Assembly: GCF_902459465.1 (NCBI RefSeq)
Contig: NC_047066.1
Span: 5,084,001 to 5,148,000 of the forward strand
DNA from: Asterias rubens
Lineage: Eukaryota
Reading direction: 5' to 3'
DNA length: 64,000 nt
Numbering within the stretch: the stretch's first letter is position 1; each line of letters starts with the position of its first letter. Shown piece by piece: positions 44,868 to 52,093 of the stretch. The notes under the pieces were generated by a model. It saw nothing but the letters and a program-made list of their open reading frames with translations, was not told the DNA's origin and made no database searches. The position numbers and the translations under genes are program-made.

Positions 44868-47800
44868 TTAAAAGTTGTACTTCTTGTCGCTCACGTAGTC
44901 TATGTTCCAGCCGTGTTTATCCGCAAGTAGGCGCATGCATCGCTCGGCCACCATAGCAATAGTCAGACTGGGGTTGACTCCAAGACTACGTGGAATGATC
45001 GCACCGTCCATGACGTACAAACCCGGATGTACATCTGATGTATTGCCAACAAAAACCTTTTTCATAAAATGAAATAACAGTATGCTTAGAATTGTGTAAG
45101 GGATTGAATTACACTGACTGTTTTTATAAAGGGATATCACACAGCATTTGTTGTTGTAAATTTATAACAATTTGAATATCTCCTGAGAAGAAAATTATTG
45201 TCGTGACATTGTTTTACGCGTTTCTTAAAAACTACAGCATCTCAGCAAGTAATATTTAAGGGAAGCTTTCTATCATCATCATCTTCGAACCGCGTGAGTT
45301 TAATGTAAATCTGTGGACATCGTGTTTTGTGTCGCACAAAAATTATTCATATCCTTTAGAATGTGTGCAGGGAACCTGGCAGAAATGGCTGAAGTGCAAT
45401 TCATTTTCGTCATATTCACCTGTCCTTCGTGGCTGACCACACCCTCTTCACCTGTCTCGCCCATGCCACACCCACCGAGAGGGTGCACCGTAGTTACACC
45501 TTTAGTGTGTCTCAGCTTAGCGAAGAGACCAGCCCAGAGGGGGTTTGGTATGTAGTGACCGTGCAGCGAGGCCGTGGCTTCCTTTATACCTGTGAATCAA
45601 GGTTTTAAACAAATTACCAACAAATGTAAATTTTGTTTTACATTTATTACCATAATGGTCCAGATATTAAACACATGGAAGGACGTGGTTGTACTAGTCT
45701 AAAGGTCTCAAAGATTATCATAGAAGTACGTTTATACAAATAGTGACCCGTTTCAGACAGAGTCGCGCCGAACCAAATTATAAATTAAGTACATGAACAG
45801 TTCGACGTCTGAAACAGTTAGGAGCGCCTGGACGCACTGGAAGTTGATACACGACTGTTGCATGGTTTAACCGCTTACCCCTACCCAAGAGCAGGGGTAT
45901 GCCAATTTGCCCGGGGCACTGACAGAGGGCAGACAAAGTGCGGACCTGGGGTAAAGCGATCATAGTGTGAAAAGGCCGGCCGTTATTTCCCGGGGGCAAC
46001 CCCGGGGAATAGAGTTGTGTTAAAAGGCCTATGAACAAGACTCTGGAGCTTACCTTCGTGGACTGTGTTGAAGTTTTCGCCGTCCCCTACGCCCGGATAG
46101 TCGATCCAGACTCTTCCATTCTCTTCGTCCAGTCGAACGACACCTTCGGACGTGTCGACACTCATGGCCAACATACATGCGGTATTGGTGAATGCCTTCC
46201 CTGTGATGTGTCGAGCTAGTTCCCTCCAGTCGTCCTCTCCCGGCGTGGTGTCGACAGCGCTGTGAGGTGCCTCTAGCCACTTCAAGATGAACTTATACGG
46301 GAGCTCGGCGGCGGAGGGGACGGTGCCGTCTTCCAGCACGTAGCTGTGCTCGACACCCTTGTTGTTCCGGTCTCGTAGATCGATCACCTTGGTGATCCCG
46401 GGACCGGGTCCTTTTCCCTTGTCCTATTTCGGTTGAAAAATAAAACAAAAGACCTTATTCACCTGATTTCATTGTGGTAGGGTGCCCCCTCGCCTATAGG
46501 TCTCAAGATAAACGTGTAGTGACGTAAGCTTTCTATATATGTGTTTTGATTGGTCCGAGGTGACGTTTGGAAGCTGCACTTTCGATCGCTGGCATAATGT
46601 AGGTGAAAGGTGAATATGAACAAGGTGAATATGAACGAGGATTGACCTAGACTAGAGGGCACTCTCTGACTTAACTCAATAGCTTTGAAGGGTGACGTCA
46701 GGTGTTCAGGCTAGAAAGCGGGTAGACTGGTCAAATATTGGGTGCGTTCGTTTATCTGCACACGTTCGTCCTGGAAAGAAAACCCGTCACACACACCGGG
46801 GTTCGACCCAGGGAAGCTAAACGAACGCACCCACAAGTATTGGTTTTACATAACCAGTTATTATGCACGGGGACTGGCGTGTGACGTCAGATTTTTAGGC
46901 TATAAAGGAAGTTGTTCTGGTCAATCATGTGCGCCATAGTGTCTATTGAAACTTTACCGCACTTACATCCAGTAGTACTGATTAATTTGTCTTAAATGTA
47001 GTACAAATTAAAGATGTTGAGACATTTTGCAAACTTGGACTTGTTTTTAACCTTTTGTCAATAACCGACCGGGAAACATCCCAAAAGTGTCAAAGAGGAT
47101 TCCTACCTTTCTGGCCTCCTTAGTGGAGATCCCAACCGGTTTTAACGGCATCTTGGTGTTGTAGCTAAACCCAACCGTGTCTCCATTCGTAGTGAACGAC
47201 TGGCCGAGCCGCGAGGAAAGCTCCAGCATATCACGGCTTTTTGAATTCAGCAGGATGTTGGTCGAGCCAAGGGCGCCCCCACCGAGGATGACCACCGGAG
47301 CGGTTATGACGCGTTGCGTTGCGTTGAAGTCACCGTTGACGTAAGGGGCGTAATGGACGCGCCACTCGGCGCGTTCGTCGTCTCGAGAAATGACCCTGAC
47401 CTCAACCTGTCAAGAACACAAAAATGTCATAAAATCTTTCGACTATGATGATGCTGTTTTCAAAAACTTGTGCTCGTATGAATATAAATAATGATTTAGC
47501 AACGATATAACAATGATTTAGCTCTTCGTGAAAACGCAGTTCCAGGGTTCTTCAGATGTTTGTCTTTCACCAACTTAGCATAATTAATGTAGACGACTTT
47601 TAGGTCTATAAATTTGAAAATTTTGTAGATACTGTTCAACTAAATCGAAACCACCAAAAAGTCAAAATTAGTTGTTTTTGTTCTTCTCGACTTTCATTTT
47701 TTCGTCCCTTCGTGAAACTGCTGGCGATGTGGACAATGGTTTCTGTATCAGAGAAAAAAAAAAAAAATTCCCCCAACGGCAGTAACTAGGGAGATTGTTC

Positions 47801-50800: not shown

Positions 50801-52093
50801 ATGTTAAAGGTCGATGTATCAATGCAAAAGGCCAATCAATCCATTCAAAAGGTCGATCAGTCGATGCAGAAGATCGATCAATGCAAAAAACCAATCGGTG
50901 GGTTGATCGGATTATTTGCTTTTTCGGCGTTCCATAAGAGATGGTAGAAATTACGCTTGCCAATATTCGTTCTCTTTTTACCTTGCATGTATTTCTCTCC
51001 ATGTTGGGTCAGCTGCAATTCCTTCAGCCCCGCCAGTCCGGTCTCGGGAAAATCGCCCGGCCTCCATTCTTTGCCTCTCTCCAGAAGGCAAACACTCTTC
51101 CCTGCGCGTGCGCAGCGGCTTGCTGCTATCGAGCCGCCATAACCGGAACCGACGATAATGACGTCATACGACAACTGGATGTCAGTCAGGGGCGAGGATA
51201 GATGGTAATTTTTGTAGCTGGGCTGGAACTTTAATAACAAATTAAGAAGATGGAGTTTGATTTATCCAATCACGATCATAATGTGACATCTTTATCATGG
51301 TGTGGTCACCTTGATTTTACTCCATTCCAACTCATTGTAACCAAACTCAGCTGGACAAATATAAAGTCTGGGGCCATGCGCAATGAATGTTAGCATTCAT
51401 TACCGTTATACAGCGAACATGACCAATATTGTGACAGCGCGATAAAGGTCTAATAGAAATTGTCAAACTAGCTCCCTTCGCCTCGGGAACTATAGTTACT
51501 TCCACTACCTATGGGAGGTAATAATTGTCGACTATTCGGCATCAAACCATGTCATGTATACTCTATTAAAGACTAGACACTATTGGTAGTTACTCAAAAC
51601 AATTATTATCATAAAACCTTGATTTCGAGTAATGGGGAGAGGTTGATGGTATAAAACATTGTAAGAAACGGCTCTCTCTGAAGTGACGTAGTTTTCGAGA
51701 AAGAGGTAATTTTCCACGAATTTGATTTTTTGACCTCAGATTTAGAATTTGAGGTCTCGAAATCAAGCATCTGAAAGCACACAACTTCGTGTGACAAAGG
51801 TGTTTTTTCTTCCATTATTATCTCACACTTTCGACGACCGATTGAGTTCAAATTTTCACAGGTTATTTTTTTTATGCATAGGTTGAGATACACCAACTGT
51901 GAAGACTAGTCTTTGACAATTACCAATAGTGTCCGGTGTCTTTAACACCACACTACTCATCAATAATCTTCAGCCGTGGGAACAGTCAACATGCTGCCCA
52001 CCTCGCCAGACGGCTTCTGTTGCATTAATTAACATTTAACATTGAAATTGATAAATACTTTACCGATTGAGGTTTCGAGCTGCTTTGACCCAT
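44868..52093 (-). CDS. GMC oxidoreductase, cholesterol-oxidase (ChoD/ChoA)-like flavoprotein, 9 coding exons, ~600 aa
   Basis: Exons (minus): 52093-52064 ([10 protein letters not shown]; less certain), 51228 or 51222-50982, 49989-49856, 49562-49372, 48134-47960, 47406-47107, 46423-46054, 45589-45420, 45056-44868. All GT-AG and in frame. FAD fold [16 protein letters not shown]...[50 protein letters not shown] and [14 protein letters not shown] (the His/Asn pair typical of cholesterol oxidases). Confidence 0.9.
48262..48745. mobile_element. Two adjacent deleted Kolobok-like MITE copies in a GMC intron
   Basis: 48262-48426 is TTAAAGACACTGG...GTGTCCACTGCCTTTAA with an internal deletion; a second copy follows, ending GTGTCCAATGTCTTTAA at ~48745. 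Confidence 0.7.
49009..49337. mobile_element. Kolobok-like TTAA MITE (main family), GMC intron
   Basis: TTAAAGGCAGTGGACACTTTTGGTAATT ... TGTCCAGTATCTTTAA. Confidence 0.78.
50208..50590. mobile_element. Kolobok-like TTAA MITE (main family), GMC intron
   Basis: TTAAAAGCAGTGGACACTATTGGTAATT ... AATTACCAATAGTGTCCACTGCCTTTAA. Confidence 0.82.
50690..50915. repeat. Degenerate 21-bp minisatellite (GATCGATCAATCGATGCAAAA) x ~10 in a GMC intron
   Basis: Direct periodicity; it produces the heptad ORFs at 50703-51002 and 50759-50947. Confidence 0.85.
51566..51945. mobile_element. Kolobok-like TTAA MITE (main family), GMC intron
   Basis: TTAAAGACTAGACACTATTGGTAG ... TTACCAATAGTGTCCGGTGTCTTTAA. Confidence 0.78.

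What the first reader, a model, noticed from the sequence alone, without database searches (positions are those of the whole stretch)
44868..52093. Intron-rich animal gene for a bacterial-type cholesterol-oxidase-like GMC enzyme
Seen: [50 protein letters not shown] and GVNPSLTI across 9 spliced exons. Established: this signature and His/Asn pair resemble bacterial cholesterol oxidase/ChoD-type GMCs more than insect glucose dehydrogenase or choline dehydrogenase; vertebrates lack a cholesterol oxidase; sea stars convert dietary cholesterol to 5-alpha-Delta7 sterols via 3-oxo intermediates and make steroidal saponins. Inference: an anciently acquired or patchily retained sterol 3-beta-OH oxidase, a candidate for the entry step of asteroid sterol remodelling. 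It stops right after the GMC domain, whereas my recollection is that many homologues carry a C-terminal hydrolase fusion.
Basis: partly seen in the sequence, partly recalled or inferred. Interest (0 to 1): 0.7.

Follow-up and report, generated by a model that had tools for sequence, protein, structure and literature searches.

The report
Sea-star ChoD-like GMC flavoenzyme gene
This is a real, expressed sea-star gene for a flavin enzyme of a mostly bacterial, uncharacterised family that databases call "cholesterol oxidase-like"; animals have carried it since before corals and sea stars diverged, it probably also holds an iron-sulfur cluster, and nothing yet ties it to sterols.

Summary
Window 44868-52093 (minus strand) holds nine GT-AG coding exons giving a 601-aa GMC flavoprotein. 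RNA contigs from three studies join exons 2-7 exactly. The gene is single-copy.

The nearest characterised proteins are cholesterol oxidases: M. tuberculosis ChoD and Acinetobacter ChoxAB (21-23% identity to the brittle-star orthologue) and class I ChoA/ChoB (17-20%). It fails the ChoxAB family cut-off (139 vs 850 bits). It belongs instead to an uncharacterised family that is 41-47% identical in many bacterial phyla, where it is usually fused to a lipase-like hydrolase.

NCBI already names the urchin, brittle-star, amphioxus, coral and Hydra orthologues "cholesterol oxidase-like". Animal sequences form one clade that follows the species tree and share intron positions, so this is an old, patchily retained animal gene, not a recent transfer.

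New here:
- An invariant C-x2-C-x2-C-x3-C motif aligns with the [4Fe-4S] ligands of a solved GMC acetol dehydrogenase, so the enzyme is probably a dehydrogenase, not an oxidase.
- The N-terminal MGQSSSK fits the N-myristoylation consensus, and similar N-termini occur in other animal orthologues.
- The sea star has lost the hydrolase module.

The sterol-remodelling idea is untested, and the gene's distribution does not favour it.

The parts
52064..52093 (-). Coding exon 1: ATG plus 9 codons ([10 protein letters not shown]), which fits the N-myristoylation consensus. In-frame TAG codons lie just upstream.
   Evidence: Depth in bin 51950-52149 scales with the transcript contigs. A likely acceptor at about 52121/52122 suggests a further non-coding 5' exon upstream (inference).
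50982..51228 (-). Coding exon 2: FAD-binding Rossmann start (GSGYGG encoded at 51133-51150).
   Evidence: FAD_binding_2 and NAD_binding_8 hits. RNA contigs cover 50978-51228.
49856..49989 (-). Coding exon 3 ([14 protein letters not shown]).
   Evidence: RNA contigs cover 49854-49985.
49372..49562 (-). Coding exon 4.
   Evidence: RNA contigs cover 49372-49560.
47960..48134 (-). Coding exon 5, which holds the Cys motif and [11 protein letters not shown].
   Evidence: GMC_oxred_N positions 109-146. RNA contigs cover 47958-48134.
48038..48070 (-). C223-N-N-C226-G-N-C229-C-G-G-C233: the C-x2-C-x2-C-x3-C motif, a putative [4Fe-4S] site.
   Evidence: Invariant in alignments A1-A3. Present in 206 of 216 family sequences. 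Aligns with C187/C190/C193/C197 of the AceDH-like alpha subunit. A profile of the region hits 4Fe-4S motifs in the PDB.
47107..47406 (-). Coding exon 6 ([22 protein letters not shown]).
   Evidence: RNA contigs cover 47106-47404.
46054..46423 (-). Coding exon 7: substrate-binding domain, the most family-specific part.
   Evidence: Only 16 hits at E<=0.001 among 1.84 billion cluster representatives, three of them spurious repeat proteins. RNA contigs cover it from 46150, where the laid stretch began.
45420..45589 (-). Coding exon 8, with HPLGGC. The catalytic His518 codon is at 45483-45485.
   Evidence: His aligns with H447 of 1COY.
44868..45056 (-). Coding exon 9, with GVNPSLTI (Asn567 codon at 44973-44975) and the TAA stop.
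   Evidence: GMC_oxred_C positions 112-139. Asn aligns with N485 of 1COY.

Best explanation
The gene is genuine, transcribed and single-copy in this sea-star genome. It encodes a 601-aa cytosolic FAD enzyme of the GMC superfamily. It belongs to an uncharacterised, mainly bacterial subfamily related to the ChoD/ChoxAB-type 'cholesterol oxidases'. Most members of that subfamily are a three-part fusion: GMC domain, a middle domain and a lipase-like alpha/beta-hydrolase.

Eukaryotic members form one clade: Diphylleia, two unnamed sequences of unknown organism (one with a C2 domain) and animals. Inside animals the gene was inherited vertically from before the cnidarian-bilaterian split and was lost in many lineages. 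The sea-star copy kept only the GMC module.

Proposed mechanism (inferred): the His518/Asn567 pair and FAD abstract hydride from a hydroxyl group of a hydrophobic substrate. Electrons then leave through a [4Fe-4S] (or 3Fe-4S) cluster held by C223/C226/C229/C233 to an external acceptor, not mainly to O2. An N-terminal myristoyl group holds the enzyme on the cytosolic face of a membrane. The substrate is probably a lipid alcohol. A sterol 3-beta-hydroxyl is one candidate among several.
For: Gene and expression. Single copy with no hydrolase domain.

Family placement: 58% identity to Amphiura, 55% to the Lytechinus fusion, 47-53% to amphioxus and corals, and 41-47% to bacterial proteins over the full length. 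At least 580 bacterial loci across many phyla encode a relative. The nearest characterised proteins are ChoD and ChoxAB (21-23%) and ChoA/ChoB (17-20%).

Evolution: in the careful ML tree animals score 100/98, echinoderms 100/99, sea star plus brittle star 100/97, and the eukaryote clade 99/95. Five of the eight sea-star introns share position and phase with another phylum, two of them with Hydra.

Fe-S: the motif is invariant. Nine relatives lack only the second Cys, which leaves the C-x5-C-x3-C pattern of the 3Fe-4S ligands of BcGDH (PMC6719666). In BLASTP the four Cys align with those that bind the [4Fe-4S] core in AceDH (bioRxiv 10.64898/2026.06.11.731722). Fe-S GMC dehydrogenases rank directly after the cholesterol oxidases in the fold search.

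Membrane and lipid link: N-termini beginning MG, with a small residue (S, T or G) at position 6, occur in the sea star, Amphiura, Oculina, Montipora and Hydra. One relative of unknown organism carries an N-terminal C2 domain. The fused hydrolase is closest to gastric and lysosomal acid lipase.
Against: No member of this subfamily has been assayed. The Fe-S cluster is inferred from motif and alignment only; four Cys could instead bind zinc or be structural. The myristoylation motif is a weak predictor, and several orthologues lack it (Lytechinus, Branchiostoma). The exon 1-2 junction was not displayed in the read table. The similarity to acid lipase is weak (E 1.7e-4). No electron acceptor is known for an animal enzyme of this kind. 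The bacterial backbone of the tree is unresolved, so the donor and the direction of the ancient transfer are not shown.
Confidence: 0.6

Rival explanations
1. One reading: the enzyme is a sterol 3-beta-hydroxyl oxidase (or isomerase) that performs the entry step of the asteroid conversion of delta-5 sterols to 5-alpha-delta-7 sterols and of steroidal saponin synthesis.
For: The nearest characterised and solved relatives are cholesterol oxidases. The His/Asn pair is conserved. The fused hydrolase of relatives resembles lysosomal acid lipase/cholesteryl ester hydrolase. The genes for lathosterol formation in echinoderms are stated to be unknown, and the proposed 5-alpha-reductase route would, from general steroid enzymology, need a 3-oxo-delta-4 intermediate (PMC9236903).
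Against: Identity to characterised cholesterol oxidases is only 17-27%, and the ChoxAB model scores 139 bits against a cut-off of 850. Orthologues occur in sea urchins (no lathosterol, PMC9236903), brittle stars, amphioxus, corals and Hydra. None from a sea cucumber appeared among the 120 best hits. The bacterial family is widespread in groups not known for sterols (Pseudomonas, Nostoc-type cyanobacteria, Acidobacteriota). The isomerase base Glu361 could not be aligned. The Cys motif is absent from true class I oxidases.
Confidence: 0.17
2. The enzyme is a true O2-dependent, H2O2-forming oxidase, and the four cysteines are structural (zinc or disulfides) rather than an Fe-S site.
For: Acinetobacter ChoxAB was reported to show weak cholesterol oxidase activity (PMC8409315). 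ChoD/ChoxAB-type proteins from two bacterial genomes (534-621 bits to the ChoxAB model NF058674) carry the same motif. The PDB profile hits to 4Fe-4S motifs have marginal E-values (3.7e-4 at best).
Against: In the two GMC enzymes whose published structures were read here, Cys at this position bind an Fe-S cluster: BcGDH and AceDH. The relatives with three Cys lose exactly the second Cys. From general knowledge of ferredoxins, that is the position missing in 3Fe-4S sites.
Confidence: 0.25
3. The gene is a recent bacterial transfer into the sea star, or bacterial contamination of the assembly.
For: Up to 47% identity to bacterial proteins, and the family is overwhelmingly bacterial.
Against: There are eight spliceosomal introns, spliced transcripts, flanking animal genes (MMPs, a LINE, a galactosyltransferase) and a chromosome-scale contig. 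Animal monophyly is congruent with the species tree. Introns are shared with amphioxus and Hydra.
Confidence: 0.01

Closest known systems
ChoD / ChoxAB-type GMC 'cholesterol oxidases' (M. tuberculosis Rv3409c, P9WMV9; Acinetobacter ChoxAB, A0A4D6G3C8; NCBIfam NF058674)
   Same: They are the best Swiss-Prot structural matches (TM 0.67-0.68, 21-23% identity to the Amphiura orthologue). They share the GMC fold, the His/Asn pair, the absence of a secretion signal, and the same C-x2-C-x2-C-x3-C motif (seen in ChoD/ChoxAB-type proteins from two bacterial genomes).
   Different: The sea-star protein is only about 27% identical to those ChoD/ChoxAB-type proteins. The Amphiura orthologue scores 139 bits against the family cut-off of 850. 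The substrate-binding domain is not alignable by sequence. This is an animal, intron-bearing gene with a likely lipidated N-terminus.
Class I secreted cholesterol oxidases (Streptomyces ChoA, 1B4V; Brevibacterium, 1COY)
   Same: They are the best solved-structure matches (Foldseek E about 1e-29, TM 0.63-0.67 by query). His447 and Asn485 align with His518 and Asn567.
   Different: Identity is 17-20%. They have no Cys motif at the equivalent loop, are secreted, and use O2. The Glu361 equivalent could not be assessed.
Fe-S-containing GMC dehydrogenases (Burkholderia FAD-GDH alpha, 6A2U/8GRJ; Gluconobacter fructose dehydrogenase large subunit, 7W2J; Methylacidiphilum acetol dehydrogenase AceDH alpha)
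   Same: They are the next-best solved structures (E 1e-25 to 1e-22). The Cys motif sits in the same loop, and the four Cys align one-to-one with the AceDH cluster ligands. The three-Cys variants match the BcGDH ligand spacing.
   Different: Identity is 14-22%. BcGDH and AceDH carry a Tat-signal small subunit. BcGDH passes electrons to a multihaem cytochrome c subunit, and AceDH can use a cytochrome c as acceptor in vitro. None of these partners is evident for the animal protein.
Uncharacterised GMC-middle domain-alpha/beta-hydrolase fusions (bacteria, about 1150 aa; Lytechinus XP_041456255.1; Branchiostoma XP_035684275.1; Diphylleia)
   Same: This is the actual family of the sea-star protein: 41-58% identity over the whole GMC module, the same motifs, and one clade in the tree.
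   Different: The sea-star gene lacks the middle and hydrolase modules.

Membership tests
GMC oxidoreductase superfamily (PF00732 / PF05199) | N-terminal GxGxxG FAD-binding Rossmann motif | tested here: met
   GSGYGG is at aa 37-42. Exon 2 hits FAD_binding_2 and NAD_binding_8 above their cut-offs.
GMC oxidoreductase superfamily (PF00732 / PF05199) | GMC_oxred_N and GMC_oxred_C domains | tested here: met
   Of the single exons, exon 9 passes the GMC_oxred_C cut-off (29.4 vs 24.6 bits), while exons 5 and 8 fall just below theirs. Full-length orthologues 52-55% identical to the model score 45-50 bits against cut-offs of 23-25. The predicted fold of the Amphiura orthologue has pTM 0.92.
GMC oxidoreductase superfamily (PF00732 / PF05199) | Catalytic His plus Asn/His pair near the C-terminus | tested here: met
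   His518 (HPLGGC) and Asn567 (GVNP) align with H447 and N485 of 1COY. The His motif is found in 212 of 216 family sequences.
ChoD/ChoxAB cholesterol oxidase (NCBIfam NF058674, equivalog) | HMM score at or above the curated cut-off of 850 bits | tested here: not met
   139 bits for the Amphiura orthologue, 153 for Lytechinus and 161 for a bacterial relative.
Class I cholesterol oxidase (ChoA/ChoB, EC 1.1.3.6) | Family-level sequence similarity across the substrate-binding domain | tested here: not met
   Exon 7 finds no PDB chain at E<=1. Only the FAD-domain segments align, at 17-20% identity.
Class I cholesterol oxidase (ChoA/ChoB, EC 1.1.3.6) | Glu361 isomerisation base and a steroid-binding pocket | not testable with these tools
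   No residue-level structural superposition or model coordinates are available.
Class I cholesterol oxidase (ChoA/ChoB, EC 1.1.3.6) | Oxidation of cholesterol with O2 as the acceptor | not testable with these tools
   This needs an enzyme assay.
Fe-S GMC dehydrogenases (BcGDH alpha, FDH large subunit, AceDH alpha) | Cys ligands in the loop before the GAK/NYL segment, with the spacing seen in solved structures | tested here: met
   C223/C226/C229/C233 align with C187/C190/C193/C197 of the AceDH-like protein. The motif is invariant. Literature.
Fe-S GMC dehydrogenases (BcGDH alpha, FDH large subunit, AceDH alpha) | Bound Fe-S cluster | not testable with these tools
   This needs metal analysis, EPR or a structure.
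Fe-S GMC dehydrogenases (BcGDH alpha, FDH large subunit, AceDH alpha) | Tat-signal small subunit and a cytochrome c partner | not tested
   No search for a small subunit was made in the sea-star genome. In bacteria, 17-18 of 80 relatives have a di-haem cytochrome c gene directly downstream.
GMC-middle domain-hydrolase fusion family (uncharacterised) | Full-length GMC module at least 40% identical and in the same clade | tested here: met
GMC-middle domain-hydrolase fusion family (uncharacterised) | C-terminal middle domain plus alpha/beta-hydrolase | tested here: not met
   No match in the window or in the whole genome. A stop codon follows the GMC domain.

The most novel reading that the evidence does not exclude
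Animals (echinoderms, amphioxus, cnidarians) retain a membrane-anchored GMC dehydrogenase that carries both FAD and an iron-sulfur cluster. Such a cofactor pair is so far described only in bacterial periplasmic GMC complexes. In sea stars this enzyme would supply the unassigned 3-beta-hydroxysterol oxidation step that lets 5-alpha-reductase and a DAF-36-type desaturase turn cholesterol into saponin-resistant delta-7 sterols.
Probability: 0.08. Interest if true: 0.8.

Novelty: new variant of a known kind. Interest (0 to 1): 0.45.

Why it matters
The gene itself is not new, because NCBI pipelines already label its relatives "cholesterol oxidase-like". That label is probably misleading. The family is distinct from both assayed cholesterol-oxidase families, has no characterised member, and carries an invariant ferredoxin-type motif that in solved GMC enzymes holds an Fe-S cluster.

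If the cluster is real, this would be an Fe-S GMC dehydrogenase in animals, which my literature searches did not turn up. It appears to have been adapted to eukaryotic membranes by N-terminal lipidation (or by a C2 domain in a relative of unknown organism). It is retained in cnidarians, echinoderms and amphioxus. No vertebrate, arthropod, nematode, mollusc or annelid orthologue appeared among the best hits.

The gene is a tractable orphan enzyme. It is also one candidate, so far unsupported, for the missing oxidation step in echinoderm delta-7 sterol formation.

Tried and rejected
- The spliced 601-aa protein could not be handed to the database tools, so exons and the 58%-identical Amphiura orthologue P0018 served as proxies. 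Single exons gave mostly sub-threshold Pfam hits (only exon 9 passed its GMC cut-off), and exon 7 gave no PDB hit.
- The first read laying attempt failed because the machine was busy. The exon 1-2 joint was not among the joints shown, because repeat-derived joints dominate the table.
- Literature searches for cholesterol oxidase in echinoderms, corals or metazoan gene transfer found nothing relevant.
- The look-up of encoding contigs had no record for two Acropora proteins, so no coral intron map was made.
- A short-region PDB search did not bring up BcGDH, so no residue-level alignment to it was obtained. The AceDH-like gene, fetched through its published peptide motif, served instead.
- The search for 3-beta-HSD (PF01073) in this genome gave one weak exon hit. 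Exon-by-exon searching is too insensitive to count such genes.
- The organism behind the long-branch relative P0011 could not be identified.
- Contamination and recent transfer were considered and rejected (introns, spliced transcripts, animal neighbours, tree).
- A direct electron-transfer link to the bacterial neighbouring cytochrome c was considered but is not claimed. The bacterial GMC proteins start directly at the conserved N-terminal segment with no obvious leader, while the cytochrome has N-terminal hydrophobic stretches that look like transmembrane helices (my reading of the sequence; its topology was not tested).
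Full report
**Observation.** The minus strand of window 44868-52093 carries nine coding exons with canonical GT...AG borders. Together they give an uninterrupted 1806-nt ORF of 601 codons. The start codon at 52093 is preceded by in-frame TAG codons, so [10 protein letters not shown] is the true N-terminus of this model. Transcript contigs from three runs of three different studies of the same organism join exons 2 to 7 at exactly the predicted borders (table 8: records of 1943, 2348, 1308 and 843 nt). 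The unlaid 5' and 3' parts of those contigs are long enough for exon 1, exons 8-9 and UTRs. Depth in the repeat-free bin 51950-52149 scales with those contigs. However, the exon 1-2 joint and the 3' end were not directly shown.

The assembly is 417.6 Mb in 150 contigs. The gene lies on a chromosome-scale contig between two matrix-metalloproteinase genes, a LINE and a galactosyltransferase gene. It is single-copy.

**What it is.** Exons hit the FAD Rossmann families and GMC_oxred_N/C. Full-length relatives were reached through exon 7, the substrate-domain exon. That exon finds only 16 proteins at E<=0.001 among 1.84 billion cluster representatives, and three of those are spurious repeat proteins.

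The model aligns end to end with these proteins:
- Amphiura filiformis: 58%.
- Lytechinus: 55%.
- Diadema: 53%.
- Branchiostoma: 51-53%.
- Scleractinian corals: 47-50%.
- Hydra and Sanderia: 39%.
- Bacterial proteins: 41-47%.

NCBI already names the animal proteins 'cholesterol oxidase-like'.

Among solved structures the best sequence matches are class I cholesterol oxidases (1COY E 1e-16). Glucose dehydrogenase reaches only 2e-7. A high-confidence model of the Amphiura orthologue (pTM 0.92) is closest to Streptomyces and Brevibacterium cholesterol oxidases. Next come the Fe-S-containing FAD glucose and fructose dehydrogenases. Among reviewed UniProt entries it is closest to M. tuberculosis ChoD, Acinetobacter ChoxAB and Rv0492c, then ChoA/ChoB, then plant long-chain alcohol oxidases. 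His518 and Asn567 align with H447 and N485 of 1COY.

The genome's ordinary animal GMC, a choline dehydrogenase on another contig, shares only local similarity with this gene. Membership is a different matter. The ChoxAB equivalog model scores 139 bits against a cut-off of 850, and the substrate domain does not align to any solved chain.

**The real family.** They come from Cyanobacteriota, Acidobacteriota, Nitrospirota, Actinomycetota, Chloroflexota, Pseudomonadota, Myxococcota, Bacteroidota, Gemmatimonadota and Verrucomicrobiota. Most are open frames of about 1150 aa: GMC, a middle domain and an alpha/beta-hydrolase. Others are about 780 aa, often with a separate hydrolase gene next door. The same fusion occurs in Lytechinus, Branchiostoma, Oculina, the protist Diphylleia rotans and unnamed sequences that group with the eukaryotes. 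The hydrolase is weakly closest to gastric and lysosomal acid lipase. The sea star has neither the middle nor the hydrolase module, in the window or anywhere in the genome. A LINE sits where relatives carry that exon.

**Evolution.** In a careful ML tree rooted on ChoD/ChoxAB-type proteins from two bacterial genomes, support values (ultrafast bootstrap / SH-aLRT) are:
- All animal sequences as one clade: 100/98.
- Deuterostomes: 85/65.
- Echinoderms: 100/99.
- Sea star plus brittle star: 100/97.
- Cnidarians: 92/80.

This mirrors the species tree. Diphylleia and two unnamed sequences of unknown organism join the animals in one clade (99/95). That clade lies inside a poorly resolved bacterial radiation.

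Intron mapping gives independent support. Five of the eight sea-star introns share alignment column and phase with another phylum:
- The intron after FTE|VEV occurs in all five genes mapped, including Hydra.
- The phase-1 intron at Q|GNPTD is shared with Hydra and both urchins.
- Two further introns are shared with amphioxus.

All five genes also begin with a 10-18-codon first coding exon followed by a phase-0 intron. The gene was therefore an intron-bearing animal gene before cnidarians and bilaterians split. 'Patchily retained' is right, and a recent transfer is excluded. An older bacterium-to-eukaryote transfer is plausible but not demonstrated.

**Mechanism.** An invariant C-x2-C-x2-C-x3-C motif (C223, C226, C229, C233; window 48038-48070) lies in the loop before [11 protein letters not shown]. 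It is complete in 206 of 216 family sequences. Nine of the other ten lack only the second Cys, which leaves C-x5-C-x3-C. That is the spacing of Cys212/218/222, which bind the 3Fe-4S cluster of Burkholderia FAD-glucose dehydrogenase (PMC6719666).

A 2026 preprint reports that the same four-Cys motif (CDQCGFCFQGC; C187/190/193/197) in a GMC acetol dehydrogenase binds a [4Fe-4S] core about 11 A from the flavin. It also reports that the enzyme reduces a cytochrome c (bioRxiv 10.64898/2026.06.11.731722). I fetched that gene through its motif. It is 526 aa with Cys at exactly those positions. In a full-length BLASTP alignment with the sea-star protein (22% identity, E 4e-11) the four Cys align one to one. 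A profile of the region finds mostly 4Fe-4S ferredoxin motifs in the PDB, though at marginal E-values. Class I cholesterol oxidases lack these Cys.

I therefore infer an FAD/Fe-S dehydrogenase rather than an H2O2-forming oxidase, at about 60% confidence.

The N-terminus MGQSSSK fits the N-myristoylation consensus (my knowledge of PROSITE PS00008). Similar N-termini occur in Amphiura (MGTASS), Oculina (MGCVSS), Montipora (MGSAPS) and Hydra (MGNCTG). One relative of unknown organism instead has an N-terminal C2 domain. Together with the lipase-like partner domain, this points to a membrane lipid alcohol as substrate.

**The sterol hypothesis.** It addresses a real gap: the genes for echinoderm lathosterol formation are stated to be unknown (PMC9236903). 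Nothing here supports it beyond the family name. Orthologues occur in sea urchins, which lack lathosterol according to that paper, and in brittle stars, amphioxus, corals and Hydra. No sea-cucumber protein appeared among the 120 best hits, although hits down to 38% identity are listed. Most bacterial hosts are not sterol organisms. I give it about 0.17.

**Novelty and verdict.** The gene's existence and its label are already in public annotation. New here are the separation from both assayed cholesterol-oxidase families, the evidence for ancient vertical inheritance with loss of the hydrolase module, the probable Fe-S cluster, and the recurrent N-terminal lipidation signal. Overall this is a new variant of a known kind, of moderate interest.

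Noticed in passing
window 48200-48700, 48950-49330, 50220-50620, 51590-51950: The introns of the gene hold at least six copies, in both orientations, of one short interspersed repeat. ORF peptides of the type FETSNSKSE...[17 protein letters not shown] recur. Contig depth there is 1e5-1e6, against about 35-90 on the exons.
   Followed up: no
window 12752-16198 and 26639-31343 (minus); L112:8879-9398: Two tandem matrix-metalloproteinase genes (Peptidase_M10 plus hemopexin) lie downstream of the GMC gene. The Branchiostoma belcheri orthologue also abuts an M10/hemopexin gene, in a different orientation. This may be old microsynteny or chance.
   Followed up: partly
window 39091-42136 (minus): LINE-type ORFs (reverse transcriptase) lie about 2.7 kb 3' of the GMC stop codon. 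This is where fusion relatives carry their single large hydrolase exon.
   Followed up: no
G000:C22:2089457-2091277 (L120:1958-3778, minus): A single-exon 607-aa choline dehydrogenase (TIGR01810 794 bits, cut-off 732) has GC 0.50 against 0.37 in its flanks. It is the genome's ordinary GMC enzyme and lacks the Cys motif.
   Followed up: partly
L020, L021, L027, L031, L032, L035-L041, L043-L045, L054, L072 (downstream of the GMC fusion gene): In 17-18 of 80 bacterial loci from three phyla, a conserved protein of about 600 aa is encoded directly downstream on the same strand. It has hydrophobic N-terminal stretches that look like transmembrane helices, two CxxCH haem motifs and a RoxA-like cytochrome c domain. 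Six loci have a PhoD-like phosphatase upstream.
   Followed up: partly
P0044, P0056, P0059, P0095, P0105, P0109, P0114, P0124, P0126: A group of bacterial relatives (the two that carry names are Actinomycetota) has Val or Ala in place of the second Cys of the motif. This leaves the three-Cys spacing of the BcGDH 3Fe-4S ligands.
   Followed up: partly
window 52121-52123: A likely splice acceptor (catag|CTAGTT) lies about 28 nt upstream of the ATG. Contigs extend 65-277 nt beyond exon 2.
   Followed up: no
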